From sequence record MK250021.1: a stretch of DNA of 64,000 bases; one strand, 5' to 3'. How positions within the stretch are numbered: the first letter of the stretch is position 1; each line of letters begins with the position of its first letter. The notes beneath the pieces were generated by a model, which did not search any database, was not told the DNA's origin, and saw nothing but the letters and a program-made list of their open reading frames with translations. Of the stretch, positions 3,347 through 57,233 are shown in pieces. Made by a program: the position numbers and the translations under genes.

Positions 3347-5251
3347 ATGGTAAGCAAGAAGAGTTTAGAAAGTAAGTATCAAAGTATGTCGGAATTAGAT
3401 CATATCTTGAATAGATCAGGTATGTATATAGGTTCCGTAAAGAATGAGAATAAGCAAATGTTTTTATATTCATCAGATGATGCAAAGATGAAATTAGTTG
3501 ATGTTGAATATACACCAGCATTGTTAAAGATGTTGGATGAGATTATATCAAATTCATGTGATGAGTATAGAAGAATAGATAATATGGGATTGACAGAAAT
3601 GTCTGTTACCATTGATAAGCATGGACGAGTAATCGTAAGAGATAATGGTGGTATTCCTGTTGTTAAACATAAGGAAGCAGGAATTTATATTCCTGAATTT
3701 ATATTCTCACAACTAAGGACAAGTAGTAATTTTGATGATTCAGAAGATAGAGATGTAATAGGTACAAACGGTCTTGGTAGTAAAATTTGTAATATATTCT
3801 CTACGTTTTTTTCTATATATACAGCAGATAAGAAACATTCATATTATAGATCATGGAAGAATAACATGCGAGAAATGAATGATGATTTACAAGTTAAGAC
3901 CACGAAAGATCATTTTACAGAAAGTACATTTGACGTTGATTTTTCCAGATTTGAATGTGGTAATGAGTTCTCGGAAGATTTTATTAATATTATAGAAAAA
4001 CGTTGTATTGATGCAGCTGCCGCTAATATAGGTTTAACTGTTCATTTTAAATATACAAATGGTAATGATGTTGTTAGAGAATCTGAATGGCATTTTCGTG
4101 CATTTGATGAGTATATTGATTTATTTTCTGATTATGTAGATACAGAACAAATGTTGAAGTTTTCTGATTCTATCATGCAAGTTTGGGTATTTCCTGATAA
4201 TGGTATTAATGTTGGATTTGTGAATGGTGCTGAATGCTCAAGAGGAACACATATCAAAGCGGTTAGAAATGAAATTAATTCTGCTGTATCTGCATATCTT
4301 TTATCAAAAGAAAAAATTGATATTACGCCAAAGAATGTAGATGGAAAATATTCAATGTTCTGTACATTCCATGTTAATAATCCGTCTTATGATTCACAGA
4401 CAAAGGAATGTTTGACAACAGTAGTTGAAAGATTTTCAAATGATAATAAGTATACATTTAAGGTACCAGATTCATTTATTAAGTCTGTTTTGAAATCAGA
4501 GATTGTAGATATTGTAATAGATTGGTATAAACAAAAATGTGAAGTAGAGGATCAAAAAACATTAAGAAAACTTAATAGACAAGCTAAAGCGAAAATTCGT
4601 AATAATGATAAATTCATTGATGCAAATTCTAAAAGATCAGCTGATAGAGAGCTTTGGATATTCGAGGGTGATTCTGCACGCGCAGGATTTAGAGCAGCAA
4701 GAGACCCACAAACACAAGCAGCATATATGTTACGAGGAGTAATTCTTAATGTAATGGGACTTGCTCCAACAAAGATTATGGCAAATAAAGAGTTGTCTGA
4801 TTTATTTAATATCATCGGTTTACAATGGGGTGAACCTGTAGATGTGAAGAAATTGAATTTCAGTAAATTGGTTATAGCAACAGATGCTGATTTTGATGGT
4901 AGTAAAATCGCAGGTCTTCTTTTAACATTCTTTAATTTATGGCCAGAACTTTATGATGCAGGTTTAATTTGTAGATGTATTACACCTATTATTAAAGCTG
5001 TTAAAGGAAACGATGTTCAGAAATTTTATACGATGGATGAATTTAGGAAGAAAGAAAATTCATTGAAAGGATACAAGATAACATATTTAAAAGGTCTTGG
5101 CTCAAGTACGAATGAAGATTATAAGGATATGATGAGAAATTCTGTTCTTCATTTCTTTAAGAAAGATGAACTTTCTGATATGACTATTAAAACATGGTTT
5201 GGAAAGGGTATTGCAAAAGAGAGAAAATCATTACTTAAGAATGAAGTTTAA
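3347..5251 (+). CDS. type IIA DNA topoisomerase, ATPase+TOPRIM subunit (T4 gp39/gp60-like, GyrB-like)
   Basis: GHKL motifs (EIISNSCDE, DNGGIP, GTNGLGSK), TOPRIM EGDSA, IATDADFDG, YLKGLGS. Confidence 0.95.
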   Translation: MVSKKSLESKYQSMSELDHILNRSGMYIGSVKNENKQMFLYSSDDAKMKLVDVEYTPALLKMLDEIISNSCDEYRRIDNMGLTEMSVTIDKHGRVIVRDNGGIPVVKHKEAGIYIPEFIFSQLRTSSNFDDSEDRDVIGTNGLGSKICNIFSTFFSIYTADKKHSYYRSWKNNMREMNDDLQVKTTKDHFTESTFDVDFSRFECGNEFSEDFINIIEKRCIDAAAANIGLTVHFKYTNGNDVVRESEWHFRAFDEYIDLFSDYVDTEQMLKFSDSIMQVWVFPDNGINVGFVNGAECSRGTHIKAVRNEINSAVSAYLLSKEKIDITPKNVDGKYSMFCTFHVNNPSYDSQTKECLTTVVERFSNDNKYTFKVPDSFIKSVLKSEIVDIVIDWYKQKCEVEDQKTLRKLNRQAKAKIRNNDKFIDANSKRSADRELWIFEGDSARAGFRAARDPQTQAAYMLRGVILNVMGLAPTKIMANKELSDLFNIIGLQWGEPVDVKKLNFSKLVIATDADFDGSKIAGLLLTFFNLWPELYDAGLICRCITPIIKAVKGNDVQKFYTMDEFRKKENSLKGYKITYLKGLGSSTNEDYKDMMRNSVLHFFKKDELSDMTIKTWFGKGIAKERKSLLKNEV

Positions 5252-17965: not shown

Positions 17966-20900
17966 TTAACTTGCTAATATAAGAAGTATTGGTGTAAGTG
18001 CTGCAGACTTCCATATAGCATAGAATGTTTTATTCGATGTAATTGCAGCTGAATTACCTGATGTTGAACCAGAAGTTGCAGAATCACTTGTTGCCCATCC
18101 TTGGAATGTATATCCAGATTTAGTAGGTGTATAAGTACTGAATGATACTGTACTACCGGATTCAACAGATTGAGTAGGATTAGTGGTTGAACTATTATAT
18201 GTACCACCATTAAGATTCCATGTAACTGTAAATACTTGTTTCCATGCAGCGTAATATTTTGTATCACCACTATTAATAGTAGCAGTTGATGTTGAACCTG
18301 ATGTTGCAGAACTTGTTTCTGCCCATCCTTTAAAGTTATATCCACTTCTCGTTGGAGTATAACTGCCTAAATTGATTGATTTTACATATGTAACATATGG
18401 AGTAGTTGTATATGTTGTACTACTTACTACTAATGAACCACCATTTGGATAAAGACTAACTTTATATGATGCAATAGTTAACTATGCGTATACAGTCGTT
18501 GCAGATGTTATTGCTGTTTCTGTTTTTGAAATTAAAGTACCACCAGATGATGCAGTATACCATGCTGCTGTATATCTTATTGTATCTGCGTCATTCTTAA
18601 TAGGACTTGCAAAAGATGCAGGTACAGATAATTCATTATATTTTGTATTTTTATTAACTGACGATTTTTTGTTTGCTTTTGTGCCATCTTCCCATATTGC
18701 AATAGATGTATTTGTATTTTGCCAGGTAATTGTAACAGAATCTTTAGACCATGTTGCATAATATGTTTTTGCTTCTGAAACTTTCTATGAACCTGTTAAT
18801 GTTCCAGATGTGTCAGTATCTCTTATATTCCATCCTGCAAATGTATAATCAGTTTTAACAGGTTTATAATCATCATATTTAAATGATGTTACGTAAATTT
18901 CCCATTTTGTTGATTTATCTGAACTAGATACTTGTCCGCCATTACAATCTAATATAACTTTATAATTTGTACTGAAATGTAAATAGAATGTAGTATCACC
19001 TGTTACTGTAGTGTCATTATCTTTAATAACTATATTACCAGTTTCAGTAGTATACCAACTTCCATTTGACTTATATTGCTCTGATTTGTCTGAATTATAT
19101 AAAGTAACCCTAACACCTGATGGGACCTTTATATCTTTATATACCGTATCATATTTTTCTGTTGTCGTTGTTGATGATGTATATGTTTGGTCATCTTTAG
19201 AATAGAAATTATATACAGGGTAACTCTTCCAATATATTGTATAACTTCTTGCCGAACTTGAATATATAGCATAGAAATTAAATGTATTATTAATTGTAGT
19301 TATAGGATATGGAAATGTCACTATACTACCAGTTGAAGTTAATGACCATCCACTAAATGAATAAGTAGATGCTTTATCTGCTGCTTTTGTTGGTTCTGAA
19401 TTATATGTTTCTGTTTTATCACCATAATTTACTGTTGTAGATTTCTATGTGGTGTTATCTGAGAATACACCACCATTTGAGTTCCAATATATATTTTTTT
19501 CTGTTATTGTAAAATTCGCAGTAAATTTATGAGAAGATGTTAAATTAAATGTATATGGCATGCTATGACCACCGTCTGCATCAACCCAAGCTACAAATGA
19601 ATATTTTGACTTTGTTGGACTTACTTTATAACCTGCATCGGTTGTAGATACAGTTACACTTCCTTTTGCATAATAATAATATATTTCTGTTGTTTTTGTA
19701 CCACTTCCAGATGATGCAGATAATGTACCTCCATTAGGATCCCATGTTACTTTGATATATGCGGTTGGTTGCGTCCATCGAGCATATAATGTAATGTCAC
19801 TTTGTAATGTAGATGAACTAGATACAGCGTTACCGTCTGTTTTGGTGGAATAATTATTAGCAAATGTATATTTATAATTACTTCCATCTATCCATGTTGG
19901 TGTTTCATCCGGAGTTAAATCTGTATATTTAGTACCTTCACTAAATTTTTTTGTTACAGTTGTATCTGTTATTGCGGAACCATTTCTATACCATTTTGCA
20001 TATGAATTATTGATGCTAAATGTTACTGTATATGTTGTTGTATTACCTGTTTGTGATAATGTCGCCGTTCCAGTAAGGCCATTATAACTACCAGTAAATG
20101 TATATTTTCTACTGTCTTTACTTGTACCTAAATTTGGGATAGTGACACTTGAATCTGATACAGTAATACTATTATCAGTAGTACTCGAACCAATTTTATA
20201 TGAGCCGGTAAAAGTAGTGCCGTTAGTAACAGTTGTATCCGTATCTTTTGTACTTGTAGCTCTAGATGTCCATGATACATTATATGTTTTCGTCAGTACT
20301 GCTTTTAATGTTGCCGAACCACCTTTATAATCATAAGTAGTAGGGTCTACAGATACCTTTAATTTAGATGATGATTCTATAGATGCTTGTGTTCCAGAAT
20401 TACCTTGCCTTGTAAGTGTTGCAGTAGATGTAGCAGTTAATATTGTACCGGAATTATTTTTAACATCATATTGTTTCCCATCGTATATATGTTTAAGTCC
20501 TTTAACTGCTACAGAAATTGTAGCGTAACTATTATTAGCTGATGCTGTAGTTGTACCTAAAGATTCAGCTGTTTTAGATGTTGGTGTAAATGTATACATT
20601 GAATTAGTTAAGTCGCTTAATGTCCAATTTACAGTTTCCTATGAAGTCTTACCTTCCATAGAAGTATAATGCCATATATATGTACCCTTCAATGTACAAT
20701 CCGTTGCAGTTATAGTCCCTCCTGATGCTGGAAAATGATAACCAGATGAACCTTTTGCATAACTAAATGTTGTAATATTTAAATCAGTATAATAGAAAGC
20801 TTTAGATGTATCAGGACCATCTAATTTCTGAGTTACTGTAGCTTCATTAGATTTTATATTATCATATGTTGTTTGAAATTTTATAGTTCTTGCAGATGAT

Positions 20901-21952
20901 GTTGCAGGTATTGTATATGATCCTCCTCTTATATTAGTTGTTCCAGATATACCAGATACCGTATAATTACTATTAGCACTTAATGTTTCTGGACCTTGAT
21001 TTGCATCAGTTCCACCACCGGATGTTGAACCAGAAGAATATTGATATACAGTTTTATGTAATGTATATTTTCTACTTAAACTAAATGTTACAGTTCCACC
21101 GGAGCTATATACTACAGTTGGACTTACAGAAAGAATAACGCTTTCTGTTGTTTTAGTTTCCCCTGTTTTAACTGATTTTACATTAGCGTCTTGTTTAACA
21201 GTAAATTCAGGGTGTGTTAGTGTAACACTATCTATTGTTGTTGATTTTTGGATAGTTCCGCCTGCGGCAATTGTTTTAACATTTGTTACACCTGATTCTG
21301 TTGTACCTTTTGTTGTTGCCGAAACGGTTGTAAACGTAACAGTTTCAGAAGCATCTTCTGTTTCACCGGAATTGAATGTTTTTCTGTATGTTAATTTACC
21401 AGAACTTACAGTTCCACCAGATGCAGGAATATTATCAACTGTGATAACGGCATTATCTAATTTAGTTACATACTTATCACGTTTTGTTTGAGTAATTGTT
21501 ATATTTGCTTGTTCATGTATATCGCCACGTAACCCAACTGCATATATTATAATAGTTCTATCTGATGAAGCATTATCTCTTTGTTCAAATGTAACACTAA
21601 AAGGATTATTATATGTATTTTGACCATACTAAGTTGGTGTATTATTTATTTTACAACCTGATGTCTCACCACTTTTAAAAGAGGCATTAGGATAGTTATA
21701 TACTCTTTCTTCTGTTCTTGTAGAAAAGCCTTCGCGTATTAAATATGTCTCTTTACGATATAAATTAAATGTTTGTGTTGTACCACCTTCCCATGATATA
21801 TTAGGTACAGTATTTGGGTCAGAACCGTATTCTATTTTAATTAAAGTTTCTGTTTTCTTTACATAGAATCTTTTACTGCTTTTCTAACCTTCCCATGATA
21901 CGTGACTATTTTTCTAAACATCTATTGCCTAATTACTATTTTTTATAATCAT
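17966..21952 (-). CDS. tail fibre/adhesin-like Ig-domain protein (1328 aa, at least 8 TAG): BACON-like N-half plus Listeria-Bacteroides (InlB B-repeat-like) repeats
   Basis: Single frame ATG 21952 to TAA 17966, interrupted only by TAG in the parts read; T/S-rich; PASGG and N-x-SSDRT...ITQ motifs; repeated (V/W)-x-x-NGG...PT(K/R)-x-(G/D)Y-x-F-x-GW...YA-x-W; one TAG falls at VYA*L where other repeats have a sense codon. Confidence 0.8.
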
Positions 21953-21970
21953 GATTAAATAATATTATTT

Positions 21971-23041
21971 TTAAAACTAATCCTTATATGCATTATATGT
22001 AGCAATTACATCTTTAAGATGAATATCAGGGAATAATTGTAATTTTTTCAATACCTATATATAATCCTATCTATTATAATATATATTTCTAGATATTCTA
22101 TAAGGATTCTTTCCAGTTATAACAGATATTAGAATATCGTCATTAAATGAAAGTTGCATATCTTTATAATCTCTATTCTTCGCACATATAAATAAAGCAG
22201 CAAGTCTCGCAACCATTTTATCAGGATTTGTTATCTTATCAAAACCACTATACTTACCGGTCATTAAGCATTTATCCATACGATCAATGTCTTTCTATGT
22301 AACTTTATATACTTTACCTGTACATGTTAATTCATCAGCAAGTCTCTTTGTGCTAAATATAGTTTCAACTTGTCCTTTTAATGCAATACTAATTTCATTA
22401 ATTTTCTTATTTACATTTGAAAACTATTCTTGATTAATCTTATCAATAACTTTATTAATAGACGCATTTTTATCTTTATCACCTGGTCGGCGTAAAGGCG
22501 TTGATGGATATTTAATTAATTTCCATATAACTTTATAATCTGTTCCAAAATTATTAAATACAACAGCCCATGATTTTAATACTTTTTCTTTATTTCTATA
22601 TGTAATAGTATAAGGTTCCTATTTAATTGTAAATTCAATTTTTTTACTCTATTCCGAACCTATATAACATATAAAATAATATACTTCCTGAAATTTTCCT
22701 GTTTCTGGATCAATAACTGAATTACGGTTAATTATAACCATTTTATTTTTATCAGATAATTTATCTTTATCCATCTTTGATGCCCAAAAGAAACCATTAT
22801 CCGTACATCTATCTATTTCATTCATAACAGCTACTACTGTATTGATTACCTAATTATTTAAATCGTATTTATTAATAAAATATTCATTTACCTCTTCTTG
22901 ATTATCACACTATCCTAACGATGTTATCTTTGTAGCATTTGAAATTAATTCAGATGTTTTATTTGATGCATCATCATTATATAAATCATCAAATTCATCA
23001 TCAAATAAACTTTCCAATAAAAGTTTGATATTCTTGTTCAT
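21971..23041 (-). CDS. hypothetical protein with LLE-SLFDD leader (356 aa, 9 TAG)
   Basis: ATG 23041 (MNKNIKLLLESLFDDEFDD) is open to TAA 21971 if TAG is sense; includes track ORF 22067..22279. Confidence 0.8.
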
Positions 23042-23117
23042 AAAACGTTAAAAAATACTTTTATTATTTATTTTTGATATATTTTCATTAATGTGTTTTC
23101 TTATTTCAAATAAATGT

Positions 23118-23129
23118 TGTATCTTTGTA
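23118..23129 (+). promoter_or_regulatory. Bacteroidota-type -7 promoter element
   Basis: TGTATCTTTGTA heading the operon that ends in the TonB-dependent receptor. Confidence 0.7.
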
Positions 23130-23154
23130 TTGAATTAAATTAAACAATTAAGTT

Positions 23155-27870: not shown

Positions 27871-27935
27871 AAATATTTAAAATGAACATTAAGTAATATA
27901 AACTTAATGTTCATTTTTTAATATAAAAAATATTA

Positions 27936-27947
27936 TGTATCTTTGTA
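27936..27947 (+). promoter_or_regulatory. Bacteroidota-type -7 promoter element
   Basis: TGTATCTTTGTA upstream of 27974. Confidence 0.7.
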
Positions 27948-28984: not shown

Positions 28985-29381
28985 ATGATTTTAACAGAAA
29001 TAATATCAATAAGGAATTCTTATAGGATTCTTTAGCGGAGTTCTTGGTGAAAAAGGAGATAGTGAAGAATATACATATAAGTTAGGACCTATAGATGATT
29101 TATCACCATTATTTAAATGGGGAAATCGTTTTATAATTCCATGTGTATTATTTGCTTCACCAATAGGTTTTCTTGGAATTCCTTTATTGTATTTAGGCTT
29201 ATGTATAATTTTCGCATGTTTTGGAATTGATATTTATATATTAAGTGATAATACATTGAATATTATAGGACCTTATATATTACTATATTTTATATCATTG
29301 ATGATAGGATATAGTATAGGATGTTTTGTGACTAAAAAAGTAATATCTAATTTAATAAAGAAATATAATCATGAAAAATAA
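28985..29381 (+). pseudogene. membrane protein with apparent +1 frameshift near 29012
   Basis: ATG 28985 gives MILTEIISI; removing one A at 29011-29012 joins GILIGFFSGVLGEK... to TAA 29381, a multi-TM protein of about 131 aa. Confidence 0.5.
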
Positions 29382-29883
29382 TAAGTTTTATATTATTTTA
29401 GGATATAATGCACTTGATGAATCATATTGTGGTTATGTAGAGAATTCATTCTCTATGGGATGTGATGATGAGAGAGTACAGTTGTATTCTGTAAGTAAAG
29501 GAGATTTTCCGTGGAAGAATCGAGATTTTCCGGAGAGAAAGAAAATAGCAAAGAAATATCTAAAAGAAAATGGTGGTAGAAAAGCTTCTTTTGCACATGA
29601 TTATATTCCTGATGCTTATATGAATCCAAATTCTCCAAACCAATGGATTTGGTTTTATTTGCGTGATATTGCAGACAATTTGAATAAGAAACATTATAAT
29701 AATTGTTATTGGCAAGTATTTCGTGTTAACAGTAAACATTGCCCTGTTAATATAGATATGAAAGAATATTATAAGATTCAACATAATAAGAAATATAGAA
29801 TGACATTAACGAAATATGAAATAAGAAATATTAAATTTACAGTACAAGATCCTTTATTATTAGACTTTATACGTAATATTTAA
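29371..29883 (+). CDS. hypothetical protein (170 aa)
   Basis: Open frame, last gene before the ncRNA island. Confidence 0.75.
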   Translation: MKNNKFYIILGYNALDESYCGYVENSFSMGCDDERVQLYSVSKGDFPWKNRDFPERKKIAKKYLKENGGRKASFAHDYIPDAYMNPNSPNQWIWFYLRDIADNLNKKHYNNCYWQVFRVNSKHCPVNIDMKEYYKIQHNKKYRMTLTKYEIRNIKFTVQDPLLLDFIRNI

Positions 29884-29895
29884 TATAAAAAATAT

Positions 29896-30174
29896 ACAGT
29901 ATATAATTTTGTTATCTAAGTACATGATAATAAAATAGTGCATATCTAGTAAGACTATATGTATTTCAGTAATGGTACTGAAAGTGTTAATCGTTACTCA
30001 CGAAACAATATAAGAGTTATATGTTATATAGTAAAGACTAATATTGCAAAAGGTTAATACGCATATATAACATATATACCATTTGAGATTATGGTGAATA
30101 ATTGCAATTAGAATGTAACCATAATAATATGGCGGACCAATATAACATTCTGGGTTCGATTCCCTATATACTGT
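29896..30174 (+). ncRNA. 279-nt multi-hairpin RNA with tRNA-like acceptor/T-arm closure
   Basis: ACAGTATATA (29896) pairs with TATATACTGT (30165); GGG-TTCGATT-CCC T-loop at 30152-30164; internal helices TTTCAGTA/TACTGAAA, ATATGTTATATA/TATATAACATAT, AGAATGT/ACATTCT. Confidence 0.7.
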
Positions 30175-30229
30175 CTAAATAAAAAATTAAAAAAAGATTC
30201 ATAATTATTTTTTTAATTAAAAAAGAATG

Positions 30230-30241
30230 TGTATCTTTGTA
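30230..30241 (+). promoter_or_regulatory. Bacteroidota-type -7 promoter element driving non-coding RNAs
   Basis: TGTATCTTTGTA with no ORF downstream for more than 1.1 kb. Confidence 0.7.
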
Positions 30242-30255
30242 TTGTAAGAAATAAA

Positions 30256-30377
30256 AATGGTGATACAACCTATAAGCCATAGGTAACATGAGTTCGGTAA
30301 CCTCATGGTTCGTAAGTCGTGATAACGAATAGTCTCGGTAATAGTTGAAAAACCTTCATCGGTTATGTATCATTATT
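30256..30377 (+). ncRNA. structured RNA (closing stem plus at least three internal hairpins)
   Basis: AATGGTGATACA / TGTATCATTATT 12-bp closure; CCTAT/ATAGG, CATGAG/CTCATG and TTCGT/ACGAA hairpins. Confidence 0.55.
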
Positions 30378-30583
30378 TAACATTCATATGAGAATTAACG
30401 AAATGTCTCATATGAGCATGAGGAGTATTCCAACGGAACCGGTGTGTTTGGATTTTTAGTTGTGCATTTTTTTAATCTGACTATATTGTTGAGAAACAAT
30501 GAAAAAGAAGATACGTCGTCAGTACAAGTCCATATAATAATTTCGAAATAAAAATGGAAACTGTTAAAAATCGTATCTATTTT

Positions 30584-30681
30584 GGTTATGTTACATAATG
30601 GTTAATGAGGTATCTAATTGATATTTTAATATCAATGGAAGAAAGGTATTGCGGTGACGGGTTCGAGTCCCTCCATAACCA
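30584..30681 (+). tRNA. non-canonical tRNA-like gene with a hairpin inserted in the anticodon loop
   Basis: Perfect 7-bp acceptor GGTTATG/CATAACC plus discriminator A; D-loop AATGGTTA; T-loop TTCGAGT with a bulged stem; the anticodon loop holds about 30 nt including an ATTGATA/TATCAAT hairpin; anticodon not assignable. Confidence 0.6.
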
Positions 30682-30901
30682 CTCCTTATAATAATGAAAA
30701 GGATGCAATTATCTAACATAGATATTATTATAGTATAAGAAATTATGATAATTCTTAAAATGATAATCAAGAGATTGAAGTAACTAATTAATGTATAGTT
30801 ACTAAGGCGAAAGTATAACTGCAATTATATTAGTAGTTGGCGTTTAAAAGATTGAAGAAAATTATTTGCAGATAATTTTTGGATTGATATTAAATGTAAA
30901 A

Positions 30902-30995
30902 ATTATAATAGTGTAGCGGGAATGCACGTTCGATGATAAATCGGAAAGGGATTAACGGTATGACGTTATTAAGGGTTCGACTCCCTCTTATAAAC
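30902..30995 (+). tRNA. degenerate tRNA-like gene with long variable arm
   Basis: A/T-only acceptor (6 of 7 pairs), D-arm GTGT/GCAC, anticodon arm TTCGA-TGATAAA-TCGGA lacking U33, variable hairpin AACG/CGTT, T-arm GGG-TTCGACT-CCC. Confidence 0.55.
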
Positions 30996-31001
30996 AAATT
31001 T

Positions 31002-31156
31002 AAATACATATATTCTCACGAAGAGCGAGTAAGAGAAGGTGAGCAAATTATGTCTAATGTTATAAGTGATCATAATAACAGCTAAAACATAACAGAATTA
31101 TCTTAACGTAGGAGCTGTAAAAGGATGAACGTATGGTAACATCATTATATGTATTT
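31002..31156 (+). ncRNA. structured RNA with 11-bp closing stem
   Basis: AAATACATATA / TATATGTATTT; internal TTCTC/GAGAA and ACAGCT/AGCTGT helices. Confidence 0.5.
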
Positions 31157-31282
31157 TTATTGAATTTTTAATTGTTTGAAAATAACTTAATATATGTACT
31201 ACATCAAACTAATGACATATAAAATCAAACCAAGATGATAAGACAGAATTAAGTTATTTTTAATTTGTTTTGTTTATTTTCT

Positions 31283-31315
31283 AAAAGTCTATAATGGTTT
31301 TCATTATAGACTTTT
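31283..31315 (+). terminator. intrinsic terminator ending the ncRNA island
   Basis: AAAAGTCTATAATG / CATTATAGACTTTT. Confidence 0.7.
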
Positions 31316-31332
31316 TTATTTAAAATAAAATG

Positions 31333-31342
31333 TGTATCTTTG
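31333..31342 (+). promoter_or_regulatory. Bacteroidota-type -7 promoter element
   Basis: TGTATCTTTG heading the nadR-pnuC operon. Confidence 0.65.
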
Positions 31343-31382
31343 AAATATAAATTATAAGTAAAATAAAGTTGAATTATTAATT

Positions 31383-31796
31383 ATGTATTATATAAATCAT
31401 GAATTAGTTAATGTAGTAGAGATTAATCCTTTTGAAATTGAATCTGGAAACTTTCCAGATGAGATGATAACTATAGATGAATTAATAGATAGAATAAAGA
31501 ATAAGAAACCTATTAAACAAGGTATTAAAATTCATTTTAATATGTATGACATCATTTATGATGTAAATTCACATATATTTATGCATGACACATTCATTCA
31601 TATTCCTACTAATACAAAGATATTTGTAGAATATGATGAGAATTGGGGATGGGAACGTACATTTCTTCTTATTCCTAATTATTCAGAAAAAATATGGATA
31701 GGAGATAATAATGAAGATTGTTGGTGGGATGCTACTCACAATGAAGGTTCTTATTCTTTTGAGATGAAATCTTTTATTGAAATAGAAATAGATTAA
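31383..31796 (+). CDS. hypothetical protein (137 aa)
   Basis: Open frame after the promoter. Confidence 0.7.
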   Translation: MYYINHELVNVVEINPFEIESGNFPDEMITIDELIDRIKNKKPIKQGIKIHFNMYDIIYDVNSHIFMHDTFIHIPTNTKIFVEYDENWGWERTFLLIPNYSEKIWIGDNNEDCWWDATHNEGSYSFEMKSFIEIEID

Positions 31797-31816
31797 TATA
31801 TTTAAATTTAATAAAA

Positions 31817-32974
31817 ATGAGTAAGAATATAGGAATTTGTTTTGGCGGATATTGTCCAATGCATCAAGGTCATCTTGATGTTATTATGCGAGCAAAGAAA
31901 GAATCAGATATTGTTTATGTTGTTGTATGTGGATATACAGATGAACCACGTGCGAATGAAATAGGTTTGAATATAAAGCAACGAGAACGACTTATTAGAG
32001 AATATTTTAAAGGCGATGAGATTATAAAAGTTGTTACTGTTAATGATACAGAATTAGGTATTGATGAAAGTATGTCTGAACATAATTGGAAAGTATGGAC
32101 TGATTATGTGAAGAAACTTATTGTTAACAAAGTTTTAGACCATAAAGATAATTGGCCTTTTACAGTAGACGATACTATTAACGCATTTGAGTTGAAACTT
32201 ACTTTTTATGTTGGCGAGAAGTTTTATGTTAAATCATTAGAGAAATTAAATTATAATGTTGTATTGGTAGGATATGACAGCAATTCACCTTCTAACAGAA
32301 GTAATGATATTTCTGCAACTCTTATACGTCAGAGACCACAACTTTACTGGAATAAGATTGTATCTACATTCAAACCAAAACTAACAAAGAAGATTCTTGT
32401 ATTAGGAACAGCATCAGAAGGCAAATCAACTCTTGTAAAAGATATTGGTAATTATTTTCAGGTTCCATATACTACTGAATTTGGTAGGGATTATATGGCG
32501 AAACATTGTATGTTAGATCCAGATATTACAGTAAACGATTTTGTTGAATTCCTTATAGGACAAAGACAATATTATTTTGATGCACTTAACAGTGATAAGA
32601 ATAAAGGTGTTATTATTTCTGATACTGATAATCTCGTTACTCTTATGTATGCGAAGGCATATACAATGGATAAGAACATGCAGATTACTGAAAAAGAATA
32701 TAATGATATATTGTTACCACTTGCAAAATCATTGCAGACTAATGTAGATTGGGATGTAATTTATCTTATCAAACCACATAATACATTTGTCGATGATGGA
32801 ACACGTTATATGGAGCAAAGTTCTATTGAAGAACGTATAAAAAATTATCATATTCTTGTTAAATTATTGGAGGACTTTGATTTACTTCATAAGGTTATAG
32901 AACTAGATGGTACATATCTTGAGCATTTTGATTATGTAAAGAATTATATAAATACACTCTATGAAAAGTATTAA
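31817..32974 (+). CDS. nadR: NadR-like NMN adenylyltransferase / nicotinamide riboside kinase (no HTH)
   Basis: Cytidylyltransferase-fold HxGH (PMHQGH), ISATLIR, P-loop GTASEGKST, EFGRDY, ISDTD. Confidence 0.9.
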   Translation: MSKNIGICFGGYCPMHQGHLDVIMRAKKESDIVYVVVCGYTDEPRANEIGLNIKQRERLIREYFKGDEIIKVVTVNDTELGIDESMSEHNWKVWTDYVKKLIVNKVLDHKDNWPFTVDDTINAFELKLTFYVGEKFYVKSLEKLNYNVVLVGYDSNSPSNRSNDISATLIRQRPQLYWNKIVSTFKPKLTKKILVLGTASEGKSTLVKDIGNYFQVPYTTEFGRDYMAKHCMLDPDITVNDFVEFLIGQRQYYFDALNSDKNKGVIISDTDNLVTLMYAKAYTMDKNMQITEKEYNDILLPLAKSLQTNVDWDVIYLIKPHNTFVDDGTRYMEQSSIEERIKNYHILVKLLEDFDLLHKVIELDGTYLEHFDYVKNYINTLYEKY

Positions 32975-33623
32975 TAATATTTTATATACAGAGTTTATAA
33001 AAGGAAGAAACATATTTGAACATATGTTTCTTCTTGTAGGTATAATATTACAATTTATTGTATATTATATTACAAACGATACAATGATTTCATTAATATC
33101 TGGAGTAACAGGTATTATATCTGTTGTATTATGTTCACAGAGAAAAATTTCATTTTATTTCTTTGGATTTATACAATTATTTACTTATATGTATTTAGCA
33201 TGGCAGCAGAAATTTTATGGTGAATTAGTAGAAAATATATTCTATATAATTACCATGATTATAGGTATTGTTACATGGTTAACGAATTATAATAAGGATG
33301 AACAAATAGTAGAATCTAAAAGACTTTCTAATATACAGTTAAGTATAATAAGTAGTATAATGATTTTATTGTGTATTTTATTTGGGTATTATATGAGTAA
33401 TTATACAGATAATACACAACCATATATGGATGCTTTTTCTACAATACCGGCATTTATAGCACAAACATTATTGATGATGAGATATAGGGAACAATGGATA
33501 TTTTGGATTATAATTGATATTGTATCTATATTCATGTGGGGAATTGTAGGGAATTGGATAATGGTTATACAATTCATATTTTGGACGTTAAATTGTTTAT
33601 ACGGTTATATAAAATGGAAATAA
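32961..33623 (+). CDS. pnuC: PnuC-family nicotinamide riboside/vitamin transporter
   Basis: Multi-TM 220 aa; LISGVTGIISVVL, YMDAFSTIP, RYREQWIFWIIIDIVSI motifs; overlaps nadR. Confidence 0.9.
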   Translation: MKSINNILYTEFIKGRNIFEHMFLLVGIILQFIVYYITNDTMISLISGVTGIISVVLCSQRKISFYFFGFIQLFTYMYLAWQQKFYGELVENIFYIITMIIGIVTWLTNYNKDEQIVESKRLSNIQLSIISSIMILLCILFGYYMSNYTDNTQPYMDAFSTIPAFIAQTLLMMRYREQWIFWIIIDIVSIFMWGIVGNWIMVIQFIFWTLNCLYGYIKWK

Positions 33624-41891: not shown

Positions 41892-41894
41892 TAA

Positions 41895-42248
41895 ATGAAA
41901 AGAATTATTAATATAAGACCATTATCAGAAAATACAATAAGGAAATCTTTTGGTACTTCATTAGAAGATAAACTGAGAGAATTAAGAGATGAAGTAAAGG
42001 ATAGTAGATTACTTGAAGATACTTTAGTATTTCAGATAGGTAGGGAAGTATATACAGATAATGGTACAAGATATAAATTATTGGGAGGTCATCTATCATA
42101 CCAGGAAATGGGATTAACATAGATGGACCAACAGTTATATAGTAATATTGTTTCAGGTAAAACTGATGTTGATACAGTGCTATATAACTGGAAGAATAAA
42201 AAGGTTAAAAAATTGAACTTTTCTTCAAGAAAAACATAGAAAAAGTAA
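41895..42248 (+). CDS. hypothetical protein (117 aa, 2 TAG)
   Basis: Track ORF 41895..42122 ends in TAG; the frame continues to TAA 42248. Confidence 0.65.
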
Positions 42249-42251
42249 AAT

Positions 42252-42294
42252 AAAATGGTGAATATTTAATTTTATGTTAAATATTCACCATTTT
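42252..42294. terminator. bidirectional intrinsic terminator
   Basis: AAAATGGTGAATATTTAA / TTAAATATTCACCATTTT between convergent genes. Confidence 0.75.
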
Positions 42295-42296
42295 TA

Positions 42297-42738
42297 TTAA
42301 TATGTAGATAATTCTTGTGTAAATGTACTTAATGCATCATCTATAGATGAAAACTCTCCAAATGATACTTCTGTATCAGGATCAGAAAATACTTCAAATT
42401 CGAAATCTATTTTATCAACAGGGCCAACGGCTAATGTATATGTTCCATTATTATTCTATTGAATAGTTAAATGACTATTTTCTCCTCCACAAAAATCATC
42501 GAATTTCTATTGTAAATTATAATTATTTGCAAATATTCTCAATAATGATTCTGGTTCTCTATGTGTACCTTTTGAACCTCTCATAATTCTAACTTCAGAT
42601 GAATTAAAATATGATAAAATTATTTTCTTTAAATTATTTAATAGGTATATTAGAGTTTTCATTAAGCGTTCTTTTTACAGTTTTTGAAACAGATTTCATT
42701 ATAGATTCATAAAGTGATTTCTTTTGATTTTTATTCAT
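42297..42738 (-). pseudogene. leader-bearing gene with +1 frame offset (or a 34-aa leader ORF overlapping a 121-aa ORF)
   Basis: ATG 42738 gives MNKNQKKSLYESIMKSVSKTVKRTLNENSNIPIK then TAA; the +1 frame (own ATG at 42662) runs to TAA 42297 through 2 TAG. Confidence 0.5.
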
Positions 42739-42821
42739 AGTAATTATTTATATTTTAATTTTCATTTATATATTTATACTGAAAATATAATTATAAAAAT
42801 CCTATGTCTTTATTTACATAA

Positions 42822-43259
42822 TCAAAATAGTGCTTCACATTTATTCTCTTTTATCGGGCACCAATTCTCAAAATCCCATTTGAAAAAATCAGTACATATA
42901 ATATTATGATTTATAATATCTGTTATTTTATCTGTAATTTCAAAATTATATTTTTTTATTAGTTTTATTAATCTTTCTTTTAATTCTTCTGTATTATCAT
43001 CCATTAATTCTGTTGCATAACATGTATTTATTGCATTTTCTACATCTGAAATATTATTACAATTTTTTAATCTTTGTTCAACGACATATAAAAATATATT
43101 ACCTATACCTGCGCAAGGGTCTAAAAAAGTTTTAGAGAAATCTGTAAATACTTCTGGTGTTTCTTCACATAATTTTTCAACTATATGTATTGGCGTAAAA
43201 TCTTCTTGTGTTATATGATGTCGTTCTTTTCGTTTTTGATTTATATCTTGCTATAACAT
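42822..43259 (-). CDS. stand-alone SAM-binding half of a DNA amino-methyltransferase (145 aa, TAG at codon 3)
   Basis: QEDFTPIHIV (motif X), TFLDPCAGIGN (motif I), YATEL (motif II), IICTDFF (motif III); no NPPY. Confidence 0.8.
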
Positions 43260-43282
43260 TATAAATATTATTAATTTCTAAT

Positions 43283-43290
43283 TATTTATA
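43283..43290 (-). promoter_or_regulatory. T4-like late promoter motif TATAAATA
   Basis: Exact T4 late consensus 24 nt upstream of the ATG at 43259; the AT-rich background weakens significance. Confidence 0.4.
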
Positions 43291-43315
43291 TTAGAGAATA
43301 TTCATATTGTTTATT

Positions 43316-47619: not shown

Positions 47620-47629
47620 CAAAGATACA
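47620..47629 (-). promoter_or_regulatory. Bacteroidota-type -7 promoter element
   Basis: TGTATCTTTG upstream of the helicase. Confidence 0.65.
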
Positions 47630-47685
47630 TATTATTTTCTAAAATAAAAAATGATAGATTAGAAAATCTATCATTTTAATATTAT

Positions 47686-54795: not shown

Positions 54796-56799
54796 TCAAA
54801 GACCTGCAACATCTACACAGAATGTAAGATATTGTGTTTCTGGATAGAAACCAGCGTCTACAAGAGCATATCTTGATTTTATCATAAGCTTAGGACTCAT
54901 TGTACCTTCTGCAATAATCTGAACTGATTCAGCCATTACATATGGACAGAAGTGAACACCTGGTTCATCCTTGCCACCCTTACGACCAACAAGTACACGG
55001 TTATCAGAACCACCCATAAGAGGGTCAACATAGATTGTCAAACCGAACATACCACCGATTGGATAAAGTGAACCGCCATTCTGAGAAATAGTGTTAGCAA
55101 CAGGTGAGAATGTATAGTTAGCGTTACTCTGAAGGAGTGTAGCGATTGTGATGTTAGTTACAGCGAATGTAGCTGCACCATAACGACCTCTCTGAAGAAT
55201 CCAGTTAGAAGCAGCCAAGAAGTTAACAGCAAGTCTCTTAAGAAGAGTATCACGGTTTTCGAAAGCTGCGCCAGAAGGAATATACATTGGCTTGTATGGA
55301 AGAGCAACATTTACATAGCTCTTATAAGCAACACCAGTTGCATCATTCATATCTGACTGAGGAATTGCAAGAGCAGGAGTCATACGAACACCAGAAGTTG
55401 CAGTATAAGAAGGATCGAAGCTAAGATTCAAGTTAGCTGCAGGACCTTCAACCTCAACAAGTTTGTAATGGTTCTTCCAACCAAGAGCGAACAAACGAGA
55501 TGTGATGTGACGGTTAATAGTTGCAGAAAGCTCGTTGATACCAGCATTCTCTACCATCTTGATAACATCGATACCCCATTGTTTCTGAAGGTCTGTTACC
55601 TGTTCCTGTGTTACAGCGCAACCCACCATAATTGTACCAACCTGTACGTTCTTTGTGAACAACTGAAGTGAAAGTTGACGAGCCATTGTTTGCTCACCAG
55701 TACCACGACTCATTGGTTCATAAAGTGTTGTACCATCCTGATATGTACCATACCAAGCGTCACGATCACGCTCACCAGCACCTGTGAAACCTTGAATTTG
55801 ATCCTCAAGCATTGAGATAAGACGAGGAGCGTGAAGTGTAAGAACTACATTTACTTCCTCAGAAGAACCAACTGGAGTATAAACTGCAGTAAAATCAAGT
55901 GAACCACCATTGAAATATGCACCAAGTGACTGTGTACCAGAAACCACCTTGAACATAGGATCACCATCGATACGAGACCAACCAATGAACTCAACTACAA
56001 GTTCGTTAGAAGCACCTACATGTGGATGAGAAGAATCGAAATCTACAAAATCAGATGCAGATACAAGTGTTGTACCAGCAGGCATTGCAGAAGCACCCTT
56101 CAACATACGCTTAATCTGTGCAGGAGACAACTTAACAGCAGTAGAAGAATCTGTTGTAGAACCATCAGCAACAGTAGCCTCACCAGGAGCAATAGAAGCC
56201 TTGAATGAATGAGGAAGACCATACATCTCGAAAGGAGCGTTAGTCTGAGAGTTAGCCTGAGGATTCTGTGTACGAGCTGAATAAGCAGGAGTAGCACCAT
56301 AAGGTTGCTTTGAACCTGAATATACATAATCCATATAAGGAAGAACACCGGTAGGACCATCAAGTGGAGTTGTGTTTACAAGTTCGAAACCGATAGTCTT
56401 AGCAGCGACCTTAAGAGCAAGAGGTAACAAAGTAGGATACTTGTCACCAGAACCAAGGTTCTTGTTATCAGCGTAGTCAGCGCCAGTCAAAGCAGGTTTG
56501 CCAGCAGGAACTGGATCACCAACACCGAGTGTATTATAAAGGTTGTTATATGGTTGATATGTACCACCGAACTGTGAATATGCGTTAGATGGCATTACGA
56601 ATGCATCCTCATTCAACTTTGCTGTATTATGTGCAAGCTGAGACATCCAAGCAAGTTTATCAGCATCTTCAACACCTGTGATTTTCTTAATAGTAGGTGC
56701 CCATGATTCATAGATAGCTTTGTCGCTATTCTTAGCAGTTGCACGATTTACATATGATTCGTAAGCCTATGCAACAGACTTATTACTTTTTACTTTCAT
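54796..56799 (-). CDS. major capsid protein, T4 gp23-like (667 aa; single TAG at codon 11)
   Basis: LLPLALKVAAKTIGFELVNTTPLDGPTG, AGINELSATINRHI, YCPY-like HFCPY, SRYAL; upstream frame is open to ATG 56799 (MKVKSNKSVA*AYESY...ESWAPTIKK), matching the gp23-like propeptide. Confidence 0.92.
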
Positions 56800-57233
56800 A
56801 TTAAAATTTTGTTTATTAATTTTTTGTTAAATTTTATATTGAATTTCTTAAAATATTTATCTAAGTTATTTTTATTAATATTTACGTTTTAATTTGATAA
56901 TTTAATAACTTATAATATTTATTCAATATAATAATGGATATAAAATAAAAATATCCGTATTAAAGTTTAACTCAGATTACTTTTTACAAATTATTTATAT
57001 AATTAAATCACTATATTAAAATTTTGATTTATATATAATTACACTTTTTGTTTTCTAAGTATACTTTATTAAAATCTGTTCTTTAAATATAACCATTTTA
57101 ATTTGGTATGGTTAATTCAGTAGAATTGATTATTATAATTAATTTATTAAGTATTCTGTTATTTAAATTATTTATCTAATTATTTATCTATATTAAATTT
57201 AGTTAAAATTAAATTTAGTATATTTTAATTAGA

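What the first reader, a model, noticed from the sequence alone, without database searches (positions are those of the whole stretch)
29884..31315. 1.4 kb island of structured non-coding RNAs, three with tRNA T-loops
Seen: the longest stretch without a plausible gene in a densely coded window. It has its own promoter motif (30230) and terminator (31283). It contains at least five units with terminal closing stems (29896-30174, 30256-30377, 30584-30681, 30902-30995, 31002-31156), plus further hairpins (TCATATGAGA/TCTCATATGA near 30385-30420; AGATACG/CGTATCT about 30510-30578; AGTAACTA/TAGTTACT about 30779-30803). None is a canonical tRNA and none encodes CCA. Inference: a polycistronic array of tRNA mimics or decoys, possibly cut into units by RNase P/Z, acting against anticodon nucleases or other tRNA-sensing defences, or tuning translation.
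Basis: partly seen in the sequence, partly recalled or inferred. Interest (0 to 1): 0.75.

Follow-up and report, generated by a model that had tools for sequence, protein, structure and literature searches.

The report
tRNA-punctuated noncoding RNA operon in megaphage
This 1.4 kb gene-free stretch of the Prevotella megaphage Lak-B2 is a real, conserved and transcribed cluster of structured RNAs, three of them tRNA-shaped but unfit for normal decoding; their job is unknown, and they most likely use the host's tRNA-processing enzymes to be cut into stable pieces.

Summary
The window is bases 1-64000 of Prevotella phage Lak-B2 (MK250021.1), a 550 kb megaphage that reads TAG as Gln. 29884-31382 is by far the longest ORF-free stretch under that code. 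All three GGTTCGANTCC T-loops in the window lie there (0.01 expected by chance).

A promoter block that recurs at least 40 times per genome sits at 30190-30239, and an intrinsic terminator at 31283-31315. Between them lie five modules:
- RNA-A, about 335 nt.
- A tRNA-shaped RNA whose anticodon loop is replaced by a 27-105 nt insert (30584-30681).
- A structured leader.
- A long-variable-arm tRNA-Tyr-like gene with G33, an A1·A72 mismatch, C73 and an anticodon that is GTA or ATA depending on lineage (30902-30995).
- RNA-B, about 155 nt.

A 278 nt RNA closed by an acceptor stem and T-arm lies upstream (29897-30174).

The locus is kept in four or more Lak lineages with many compensatory base-pair changes. 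No Rfam family reaches threshold. Metatranscriptome assemblies from four studies cover the equivalent A-type locus.

Best reading: a stable-RNA operon cut at its tRNA-like modules by RNase P and RNase Z. The processing is inferred, not shown. The decoy idea stays open for the Tyr-like unit only. Devoto et al. 2019 noted highly expressed intergenic regions in Lak phages but did not describe this locus.

The parts
29897..30174 (+). Unit 1: a 278 nt RNA closed by a tRNA-like 7 bp acceptor stem (CAGTATA/TATACTG) next to a T-arm (T-loop motif at 30153-30163). It starts 14 nt after the stop codon of the 170-aa gene and lies upstream of the island promoter.
   Evidence: The acceptor stem covaries: CAGTATA/TATACTG in B, CGGTATG/CGTACTG in A1, CGGTACG/CGTACTG in L016. 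An inner hairpin shows three compensatory versions. The 3' ~120-200 nt is 72-76% identical to the A lineage. No tmRNA, tRNA or intron call from ARAGORN or Rfam.
30190..30239 (+). Lak promoter block ending in the -7 box TATCTTTG (30232-30239). The transcription start is inferred at about 30244-30249.
   Evidence: The block is invariant between the B and A lineages. The core motif occurs 5 times in the window against 0.22 expected. There are 40 or more copies in each of two Lak genomes, and one in a distant relative. RNA-library contigs break at this repeat.
30245..30583 (+). RNA-A: a promoter-proximal structured RNA of about 335 nt. It ends in the hairpin AGATACG...CGTATCT, directly before unit 2. 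It is an accessory module, deleted in one natural variant.
   Evidence: 57 consensus pairs, 19 of them with compensatory changes, against 0-2 in slid controls. Using the fold of B2 alone, double changes keep the pair 20 times and break it 6 times; slid controls give 1-4 kept and 6-10 broken. It has the highest k-mer depth in 3 of 4 RNA runs. It is deleted in L028. No Rfam match.
30584..30681 (+). Unit 2: a tRNA-shaped RNA. It has a 7 bp acceptor stem, a D-loop with GG, a 5 bp anticodon-like stem, a TGCGG variable loop, a T-arm and A73. In place of an anticodon loop it carries a lineage-specific insert of 27-30 nt (B-like) or 104-105 nt (A-like).
   Evidence: Acceptor GGTTATG/CATAACC (B) against GTCTGTA/TACAGAC (A): four of seven pairs are compensatory, and 7/7 are paired in all 12 sequences. 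The anticodon-like stem has four paired versions. The inner hairpin covaries among B-like lineages. The covariance model built from it finds ordinary tRNAs next.
30682..30901 (+). Spacer. The 5' half is variable and partly deleted in L057, L056 and L062. The 3' half (about 30813-30897) is a conserved structured leader directly before unit 3.
   Evidence: 26 consensus pairs, 8 with compensatory changes. The 3' half is retained in every lineage, including the L062 deletion variant.
30902..30995 (+). Unit 3: a tRNA-Tyr-like gene with a long variable arm. The anticodon is ATA at 30936-30938 in B2 and L056, and GTA in L057, L062, L028 and the A/C clade. Non-canonical features: G33, an A1·A72 mismatch, C73, and a T-stem with only 3 G-C pairs that are firm in every lineage.
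   Evidence: The cloverleaf has 23 pairs, 100% paired in 9 distinct sequences; 5 pairs, in the anticodon stem and the variable arm, show compensatory changes. Rfam tRNA scores 23.1-23.9 bits (threshold 29). It is absent from the published Lak tRNA tables.
31002..31156 (+). RNA-B: a 155 nt structured RNA closed by the stem AAATACATATA/TATATGTATTT. Its single-stranded blocks are invariant, for example ACGTAGGAGC and AACGTATGGTAA.
   Evidence: 30 consensus pairs, 8 compensatory against 0-1 in slid controls. The closing stem keeps pairing through a matched one-base insertion on each side. It is single-copy per genome by covariance model. No Rfam match.
31283..31315 (+). Intrinsic terminator of the RNA operon. 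The next copy of the promoter motif follows at 31329-31342 and drives the 137-aa ORF.
   Evidence: a 15 bp stem plus a T-run. The A lineage has a hairpin of different sequence plus a T-run at the same position. In run X25, RNA-library coverage ends here.

Best explanation
The island is a dedicated stable-RNA locus of Lak megaphages. A standard Lak promoter at 30190-30239 drives a non-coding transcript of about 1.07 kb that ends at the terminator 31283-31315. The transcript is modular: RNA-A, tRNA-shaped unit 2, structured leader, tRNA-Tyr-like unit 3, RNA-B.

The tRNA-shaped modules keep the upper half of a tRNA: the acceptor stem stacked on the T-arm, and the D/T-loop elbow. That is the part read by RNase P, RNase Z and the CCA-adding enzyme. 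I therefore infer that host tRNA-maturation enzymes cut the precursor at the module borders. This would release RNA-A, RNA-B and the tRNA-like RNAs as separate stable species.

Unit 1 would be cut in the same way from the 3' end of the upstream mRNA.

Shown here: the anatomy, the conservation, the structure and the presence in RNA libraries. Inferred: the processing sites, CCA addition, and any downstream role. Units 1 and 2 cannot decode. Unit 3 is at best a crippled tRNA-Tyr.
For: Identity and conservation:
- The window is Lak-B2.
- The locus is syntenic in the B lineage, L057 (88% identical), L056 (84%), L062, L028 and the A/C clade (64% overall, 74-76% in the conserved blocks).

Structure:
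- Compensatory changes against slid controls: RNA-A 19 vs 0-2, RNA-B 8 vs 0-1, unit 3 5 vs 0-1.
- A test using only the fold of B2: 20 pairs kept and 6 broken, against 1-4 and 6-10 in controls.
- The unit 2 acceptor, anticodon-like and T stems are paired in every lineage with different sequences, bar single mismatches in two sequences.

Transcription signals:
- Promoter and terminator.

Not coding, not a known RNA:
- No ORF under the phage's code.
- No Rfam family reaches threshold.

RNA evidence:
- Contigs from four metatranscriptome studies cover the A-type locus.
- In X25, depth is 16-109 from promoter to terminator, 0 in the three bins (3176-3766) directly upstream, and 0-4 over NadR.
- Depth drops 2-14 fold near the RNA-A/unit 2 junction in three runs.

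Modularity:
- Natural variants lack RNA-A (L028) or part of the spacer (L062) but keep the other modules.

Precedent:
- T4 carries the stable RNAs C and D, still of unknown function (PMC9697503). That they sit beside T4's tRNA genes is from my own knowledge.
Against: - No raw RNA reads were available. No 5' or 3' ends, no strand and no discrete species are shown (one search used contigs only).
- DNA carry-over in the RNA libraries cannot be excluded.
- The T-stems of units 1 and 3 have only 3 firm base pairs in the B lineage, which may weaken RNase P/Z recognition.
- Covariation rests on one deep split (B vs A) plus three intermediate lineages, so the independent events are few.
- The consensus structures were derived from the same alignments used to count covariation.
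- The mechanism says nothing about what the released RNAs do.
Confidence: 0.55

Rival explanations
1. Counter-defence tRNA mimics. The tRNA-shaped RNAs, above all the tRNA-Tyr-like unit 3, would replace, out-compete or soak up host factors that attack or sense tRNAs, such as tRNA-Tyr-directed nucleases.
For: - Phage tRNAs with altered anticodon loops escape host anticodon nucleases (PMC10264068).
- T5 tRNA-Tyr counters the tRNA-Tyr-degrading retron Eco7 (PMC11555353).
- A viral tRNA neutralises PARIS (PMC11464382). All three papers were found.
- Unit 3 keeps a Tyr-type anticodon loop and a long variable arm under structural selection. It also carries G33, and position 34 switches between G and A across lineages.
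- A canonical tRNA-Tyr exists elsewhere in the genome, so unit 3 is an extra copy.
Against: - Units 1 and 2 have no conserved anticodon loop, so they are not substrates for anticodon-loop nucleases.
- RNA-A and RNA-B are not tRNA-like.
- G33, C73 and A1·A72 argue against unit 3 being a working replacement tRNA.
- No defence system of the host is known.
- Nothing here tests binding or cleavage.
Confidence: 0.2
2. One large ornate RNA. The whole ~1 kb transcript would act as a single folded particle, like the GOLLD or ROOL RNAs of phages, which often lie next to tRNA genes.
For: - The modules are co-transcribed from one promoter to one terminator.
- The structure is dense and conserved throughout.
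- It is a phage locus that includes tRNA-like elements.
Against: - No match to GOLLD, ROOL or any large-RNA family even at E up to 10.
- Modules are lost independently in natural variants.
- No long-range pairs between modules appear in the consensus folds.
- Depth steps occur between modules.
Confidence: 0.08
3. Relatives of the Lak 'tRNA introns'. Units 1 and 2 would be free-standing copies of the tRNA-like elements that interrupt Lak tRNA genes: a possibly mobile class, or its domesticated remains.
For: - The architecture is the same: an acceptor stem plus T-arm closing a variable insert, as in the published introns and the B2 intron at 130888-131029.
- Other oversized tRNA-shaped RNAs occur in the genome: 236 nt at 128535-128770, 110 nt at 292542-292651, and the 'Undet' tRNAs of 96 and 127 nt.
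Against: - There is no sequence similarity between the intron and the island: alignment score 25 against 23.6 ± 3.0 for shuffles.
- The island lacks the hairpin plus AAATTAAA linker that precedes the intronic elements.
- The position is stable and syntenic in all lineages.
- No paralogues were found by BLAST or covariance model.
Confidence: 0.07
4. A decaying tRNA cluster. The units would be pseudogenes and the rest neutral spacer, transcribed by accident.
For: - tRNA scores are below threshold.
- Degenerate features are present: G33, weak T-stems, no anticodon.
- Devoto et al. list several 'pseudo' tRNAs in Lak genomes.
Against: - Base pairs are kept by compensatory changes across lineages that are only 64% identical.
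- Single-stranded blocks are invariant.
- A dedicated promoter and terminator are kept in all lineages.
- Depth in RNA libraries is high.
Confidence: 0.04

Closest known systems
Phage T4 stable RNAs C and D, encoded beside its tRNA genes
   Same: A phage locus in which tRNA genes and other small stable RNAs sit together. They are thought to be matured by host tRNA-processing enzymes. The function of the non-tRNA species is still unknown (PMC9697503; the gene arrangement and processing are from my own knowledge).
   Different: There is no sequence or Rfam relation. Here the tRNA-shaped members are themselves non-decoding. The companion RNAs are larger (about 335 and 155 nt). The host is a Bacteroidetes species and the promoter is Lak-specific.
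Lak 'enigmatic' tRNA introns and oversized 'Pseudo/Undet' tRNAs (Devoto et al. 2019, PMC6784885)
   Same: Same phages. Same building principle: an acceptor stem plus T-arm enclosing an insert of variable length. That paper also notes non-coding regions of up to ~1.5 kb that are highly expressed.
   Different: The island units are not in the published tRNA or intron tables. They are free-standing rather than inside a tRNA anticodon loop. They share no sequence with the B2 intron.
tRNA-like processing signals (MALAT1-mascRNA; tRNA punctuation of mitochondrial transcripts)
   Same: A tRNA-shaped module inside a longer transcript is cut by RNase P and RNase Z. This defines the ends of the neighbouring RNA. 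(From my own knowledge.)
   Different: Those systems are eukaryotic or organellar. Here the processing is only inferred.
tmRNA
   Same: Unit 1 has tmRNA-like topology and size: a 5' acceptor strand, about 250 nt of internal RNA, a T-arm and a 3' acceptor strand. A distant relative of these phages encodes a true tmRNA among a small cluster of tRNA genes about 3 kb upstream of its NadR gene.
   Different: G3-C70 instead of the G3·U70 alanine determinant. No conserved tag reading frame. No call by ARAGORN or the Rfam tmRNA models.
Counter-defence phage tRNAs (T5 tRNA-Tyr against retron Eco7; the tRNA-Lys variant against PARIS; anticodon-loop variants)
   Same: An extra phage-encoded tRNA-Tyr-like gene with an unusual anticodon loop (papers).
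   Different: The known examples are functional decoders. Unit 3 has G33, C73 and an A1·A72 mismatch, and it has not been tested.

Membership tests
tRNA (Rfam RF00005), for units 2 and 3 | Score at or above the family's gathering threshold of 29 bits | tested here: not met
   22.5 bits for unit 2 and 23.1 bits for unit 3 in B2; 23.9 bits for unit 3 in the A type. ARAGORN does call both.
tRNA (cloverleaf), for unit 3 | Four-arm cloverleaf kept by covariation | tested here: met
   23 pairs, 100% paired in 9 distinct sequences. 5 pairs have compensatory changes, in the anticodon stem and the variable arm.
Decoding tRNA, for unit 3 | Seven-base anticodon loop with U33 | tested here: not met
   The loop reads T-G-[G/A]-T-A-A-A in all lineages, so position 33 is G. 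The canonical Lak tRNA-Tyr has C32 and U33.
Bacterial tRNA-Tyr, for unit 3 | GUA anticodon, long variable arm, a paired 1-72 position and discriminator A73 | tested here: inconclusive
   The long variable arm is present and covaries. The anticodon is GTA in most lineages but ATA in B2 and L056. Positions 1-72 form an A·A mismatch and the discriminator is C. The list of identity elements is from my own knowledge.
Decoding tRNA, for unit 2 | A conserved anticodon loop | tested here: not met
   The anticodon-like stem encloses 27-30 nt in B-like lineages and 104-105 nt in A-like lineages, with no shared loop sequence.
tmRNA, for unit 1 | G3·U70 pair, a tag reading frame, and a match to tmRNA models | tested here: not met
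   G3-C70 is found in both lineages. The internal sequence is not conserved as a frame. No ARAGORN or Rfam tmRNA hit, even at E up to 10.
Group I intron inside a tRNA, for units 1 and 2 | A match to the group I intron model; exons that rebuild an anticodon loop | tested here: not met
   No Rfam hit. The candidate exon junctions give different 'anticodons' in the B and A lineages (read from the sequences).
Lak tRNA-intron elements (Devoto 2019, Table S6) | A hairpin, an AAATTAAA linker and a tRNA-like minihelix, inserted after position 37 of a tRNA | tested here: not met
   Only the minihelix principle is shared. There is no linker, no host tRNA, and no sequence similarity.
GOLLD / ROOL / RNase P RNA / SRP RNA / 6S RNA, for RNA-A and RNA-B | A match to the Rfam covariance model | tested here: not met
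   Nothing at gathering score over the whole window. Nothing from these families at E up to 10 in B2 or in the A type.
RNase P / RNase Z substrate | Cleavage at the 5' end and after the discriminator of the tRNA-shaped module | not testable with these tools
   Only assembled contigs of RNA runs were available. Acceptor plus T-arm stacks of 10-12 bp are present.

The most novel reading that the evidence does not exclude
Lak megaphages carry a family of 'tRNA-scaffolded' RNAs. These keep the acceptor/T-arm upper half of a tRNA as an entry ticket to host tRNA processing, CCA addition and stability. The anticodon or variable region has been replaced by cargo domains of 30 to more than 200 nt. Members would be island units 1 and 2, the 236 nt RNA at 128535-128770, the 'Undet' tRNAs and the intronic elements. 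Together with RNA-A and RNA-B they would act on the host translation or tRNA-surveillance machinery during infection. Unit 3 would be a nuclease-resistant or nuclease-blocking tRNA-Tyr mimic.
Probability: 0.25. Interest if true: 0.85.

Novelty: new variant of a known kind. Interest (0 to 1): 0.6.

Why it matters
Lak phages are among the largest known phages and are common in Prevotella-rich guts. Their describers flagged highly expressed non-coding regions and odd tRNAs as unexplained.

This locus gives those remarks a concrete anatomy:
- two RNA families with no Rfam match (RNA-A and RNA-B);
- an unannotated tRNA-Tyr-like gene whose position 34 switches between G and A;
- tRNA-shaped RNAs in which the anticodon loop is replaced by cargo.

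If the processing model holds, it shows how a phage can borrow host tRNA maturation to make stable RNAs. It also gives defined targets for asking what megaphage non-coding RNAs do. If unit 3 proves to be a decoy or an escape tRNA, it would extend the tRNA arms race to Bacteroidetes megaphages.

Tried and rejected
- Rfam at gathering score over the whole window, and at E up to 10 over the island in both B2 and the A type. Only sub-threshold tRNA hits plus chance miRNA and snoRNA hits.
- ARAGORN with intron and tmRNA options. At default stringency only the two calls. At lowered stringency, scattered and mutually inconsistent calls that I did not use.
- Hidden coding under TAG=Gln. No ORF longer than 77 aa, and indels between lineages are not in threes.
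- An exact 17-mer of RNA-B in IMG/VR gave three GC-rich chance hits inside genes.
- Distant relatives with 49-63% NadR identity (L020, L032-L049, L058-L061). The island is absent next to NadR, and there is no BLAST or covariance-model hit.
- Paralogues in whole Lak genomes. Only the promoter block repeats. RNA-B is single-copy. The unit 2 model finds only ordinary tRNAs next.
- Sequence relation to the Lak tRNA intron: none. The relation of unit 2's insert to the 236 nt RNA is weak, about 2 SD.
- A resemblance of RNA-B and RNA-A motifs to the RNase P conserved regions CR-I and CR-V was considered by eye and dropped, because there is no model support.
- No RNA run holds the B-type sequence. RNA evidence therefore comes from the A-type locus only.
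- My first promoter pattern was one base too long and found nothing. It was corrected.
Full report
**Identity of the window.** The region 29300-32000 is 100% identical, at the same coordinates, to Prevotella phage Lak-B2 (MK250021.1, 549,839 bp). It is 99.2-99.6% identical to the other baboon Lak-B genomes and about 74-75% identical, over 58% of its length, to Lak-A1, A2 and C1. Lak phages read TAG as glutamine (Devoto et al. 2019, PMC6784885). Under that code, ORFs of 80 aa or more cover 90% of the window. The stretch 29884-31382 (1499 nt) is by far the longest uncovered one; the next is 474 nt. No ORF longer than 77 aa lies in the island.

**Checking the observation.** The sequence contains exactly three GGTTCGANTCC T-loop motifs, at 30153, 30660 and 30974. 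All are on the + strand and all are in the island, against 0.01 expected. In the whole 550 kb genome there are 16 such motifs and none in the reversed-pattern control.
- The motif AATGTGTATCTTTG at 30226-30239 ends in TATCTTTG, which fits the Bacteroidetes -7 consensus TAnnTTTG (consensus from my own knowledge).
- It occurs five times in the window against 0.22 expected. The other four copies lie upstream of predicted ORF starts on the same strand, as read against the ORF list.
- The ~55 nt block around it recurs more than 40 times in each of two complete Lak genomes, and once in a distant relative.
- The only terminator-like site in 29300-31900 is 31283-31315, with a 15 bp stem and a T-run.
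- ARAGORN calls 30584-30682 and 30902-30995 as over-long tRNAs. Rfam's tRNA model gives them 22.5 and 23.1 bits, below its threshold of 29. No other family appears, even at E up to 10.

**Related sequences.** I collected the syntenic locus from these sources:
- Lak-B1, A1, A2 and C1;
- IMG/VR contigs;
- metagenome contigs found through the downstream NadR-like gene;
- Logan and ENA contigs found through NadR homologues.

The downstream genes are a NadR-type NMN adenylyltransferase and a PnuC transporter.

The island occurs in these lineages:
- the B lineage (99-100% identical among themselves);
- L057 (88% identical to B2);
- L056 (84%);
- L062 and L028, which are mosaics;
- the A/C clade (95-99% within the clade, 64% to B overall, 74-76% in the conserved blocks).

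In relatives whose NadR is only 62-63% identical, a DUF4406 gene abuts NadR and the island is absent. More distant relatives show no similarity.

**Anatomy between promoter and terminator** (alignment).

- **RNA-A (about 30245-30583).** The consensus fold has 57 pairs, 19 of them with compensatory double changes. Sliding the 3' partners by 1-3 columns gives 0-2. To avoid circularity I folded B2 alone and asked how other lineages treat those pairs. Double changes keep the pair 20 times and break it 6 times, against 1-4 kept and 6-10 broken in slid controls. RNA-A ends in the hairpin AGATACG...CGTATCT. In L028 a 282 nt deletion removes all of RNA-A except this hairpin.
- **Unit 2 (30584-30681).** It has every hallmark of the tRNA upper half and elbow. 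These are a 7 bp acceptor stem starting G1-C72, a D-loop AATGG(T)NAATGA, a five-base variable loop TGCGG, a T-arm with TTCGANT, and A73.
  - The acceptor is GGTTATG/CATAACC in B-like lineages and GTCTGTA/TACAGAC in A-like lineages, fully paired in all 12 sequences.
  - The anticodon-like stem exists in four paired versions.
  - That stem encloses 27-30 nt in B-like lineages and 104-105 nt in A-like lineages, with no common loop.
  - The inner hairpin covaries among B-like lineages.
  - No way of removing an 'intron' gives the same anticodon in both clades. Unit 2 is tRNA-shaped but cannot decode.
- **Spacer (30682-30901).** Its 5' half is variable and partly deleted in L057, L056 and L062. Its 3' half (about 30813-30897) is a conserved structured leader with 8 compensatory pairs.
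- **Unit 3 (30902-30995).** This is a cloverleaf with a long variable arm. All 23 pairs are formed in 9 distinct sequences, and 5 pairs in the anticodon stem and variable arm are compensatory.
  - ARAGORN calls it tRNA-Tyr(GTA) in the A clade and L057, and tRNA-Tyr(ATA) in B2 and L056. L062 and L028 also carry GTA in the alignment.
  - The loop reads T-G-[G/A]-T-A-A-A, so position 33 is G, not the near-universal U.
  - Positions 1 and 72 are A·A, the discriminator is C, and the T-stem has only three G-C pairs that are firm in every lineage.
  - The genome's canonical tRNA-Tyr (127924-128007) has C32, U33, GUA, G1-C72 and A73.
  - Unit 3 is missing from the published tRNA tables of all Lak genomes.
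  - TAT outnumbers TAC 16 to 1 in the window's long ORFs. An A34 would therefore match the dominant codon, if the RNA decodes at all.
- **RNA-B (31002-31156).** The consensus fold has 30 pairs, 8 of them compensatory, against 0-1 in controls. The closing stem stays paired through a matched one-base insertion on each strand. Several single-stranded blocks are invariant. A covariance model finds exactly one copy per Lak genome and nothing convincing elsewhere.

**Unit 1 (29897-30174).** It lies upstream of the promoter and starts 14 nt after the stop codon of the 170-aa gene. It is a 278 nt RNA (about 253 nt in the A clade) closed by a 7 bp acceptor stem next to a T-arm. The acceptor covaries: CAGTATA/TATACTG, CGGTATG/CGTACTG and CGGTACG/CGTACTG. 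An inner hairpin exists in three compensatory versions. Its size and topology recall tmRNA. However, it has G3-C70, no conserved reading frame, and no ARAGORN or Rfam tmRNA hit.

**Expression.** No RNA run holds the B-type sequence. Many runs hold the A-type sequence. I laid Logan contigs from four metatranscriptome runs, each from a different study, on L016:1600-7500. In L016, RNA-A is 3878-4187, unit 2 is 4188-4359, unit 3 is 4581-4673, RNA-B is 4674-4842, and NadR starts at 5001.
- All four runs cover the locus.
- In X25, depth is 16-109 from the promoter to the terminator. It is 0 in the three bins just upstream (3176-3766) and 0-4 over NadR.
- In X18, the bins holding the promoter repeat and RNA-A reach 811 and 570, against 12-60 in most other bins. 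The bin holding unit 1 reaches 158.
- Depth falls 2-14 fold near the RNA-A/unit 2 junction in three runs.
- These are contig depths. They show presence, not ends, strand or true levels, and DNA carry-over is possible.
- One RNA-run contig carries the same 282 nt RNA-A deletion as the DNA contig L028. That makes it a genomic variant, not splicing.
[quoted passage not shown] They did not analyse them.

**Wider pattern in the genome.** T-loop motifs outside annotated tRNAs led to more oversized acceptor/T-arm-closed RNAs. One is a 236 nt RNA at 128535-128770, between tRNA-Asp and tRNA-Gln. Another is a 110 nt RNA at 292542-292651. The published 'Undet' tRNAs of 96 and 127 nt belong here too. The published Lak tRNA introns are built the same way: a hairpin, an AAATTAAA linker, then an acceptor plus T-arm minihelix around a variable insert. 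The B2 intron shows no sequence similarity to the island. The link is one of architecture, not demonstrated homology.

**Interpretation.** What is shown: a conserved, structured, promoter-to-terminator non-coding locus that appears in RNA libraries. It is built from separable modules, three of which keep the tRNA upper half but not a working anticodon.

What I infer is processing. The upper half is what RNase P, RNase Z and the CCA-adding enzyme recognise. The modules therefore most likely act as processing and stability handles that break the precursor into RNA-A, RNA-B and the tRNA-like RNAs. Unit 1 would likewise be trimmed off the upstream mRNA. The closest functional parallel is phage T4's stable RNAs C and D, encoded beside its tRNAs and still of unknown function.

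It remains possible for unit 3, given the recent examples of phage tRNAs that defeat tRNA-targeting defences. Other readings are less likely for the reasons given under the rival explanations: one large ornate RNA, relatives of the intron elements, decaying pseudogenes, or hidden coding.

**Novelty.** The general phenomenon was mentioned in 2019. This locus, its modules, the unannotated tRNA-Tyr-like gene and the two Rfam-less RNAs were not described in the papers I could search. I rate it a new variant of a known kind, namely phage stable-RNA and tRNA clusters with tRNA-like processing modules. Interest is moderate to high, and function is still open.

Noticed in passing
window 30190-30239, 31329-31342, 27932-27945, 613-626 (-), 47620-47633 (-): A ~55 nt promoter block (GATTCATAATTATTTTTTTAATT...AATRTGTATCTTTG) recurs at least 40 times in each Lak genome, and once in a distant 183 kb relative. 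It is probably one temporal class of Lak promoters. Contigs in RNA assemblies break at it.
   Followed up: partly
L064:3536-3771 (MK250021.1:128535-128770) and L067:643-752 (MK250021.1:292542-292651): Two more unannotated oversized tRNA-shaped RNAs in Lak-B2. The first is 236 nt, with a perfect 7 bp acceptor (GGTTATA/TATAACC) and a 5 bp T-stem, between tRNA-Asp and tRNA-Gln. The second is 110 nt with a G+C-rich T-arm. The 236 nt RNA contains a TAATTGA...ATTGGAAGTAA stretch that weakly resembles the insert of unit 2.
   Followed up: partly
L028:3138-3210; also RNA run X20 laid on L016:3876-4159: A natural variant lacks 282 nt, which is almost all of RNA-A. The promoter runs straight into the last hairpin and unit 2. 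It is seen both in a DNA metagenome contig and in a metatranscriptome contig.
   Followed up: partly
window 30936 (position 34 of unit 3); MK250021.1:125470-125544: Lak genomes carry tRNAs with A at position 34 for split codon boxes: Ile AAT and Asn ATT in the published table, and Tyr ATA here. At the same time T-ending codons dominate (TAT:TAC 16:1, AAT:AAC 10:1). A34 in such boxes is very unusual.
   Followed up: partly
L020:1386-1774 (same as L035:386-774): A distant relative (GC 37%, NadR 51% identical) encodes a tmRNA with the tag GERTYALAA. It sits among tRNA-Leu, Thr and Arg, about 3 kb upstream of its NadR gene.
   Followed up: no
window 31383-31796; L001:2263-2480: Gene content around the island differs between clades. 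The 137-aa ORF after the terminator is found in the B lineage but not in the A clade or in L056, L057 and L062. The A clade instead has a ~72-aa ORF between unit 1 and the promoter.
   Followed up: no
window 31817-33623: A NadR-type NMN adenylyltransferase / ribosylnicotinamide kinase followed by a PnuC transporter. This is an NAD-salvage pair carried by the phage and conserved down to about 50% identity in many large gut and rumen phage contigs.
   Followed up: partly
L064:3999-4074 (MK250021.1:128998-129073); L068:1728-1812 (MK250021.1:425627-425711): ARAGORN calls a tRNA-Phe(GAA) and a tRNA-Cys(GCA) in Lak-B2. Neither is in the published B2 tRNA table.
   Followed up: no
window 20600-23154, 41892-43306, 56647-58217: Large apparent gene-free gaps under the standard code close when TAG is read as Gln. 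Coverage rises from 74% to 90%, which fits the published recoding.
   Followed up: yes
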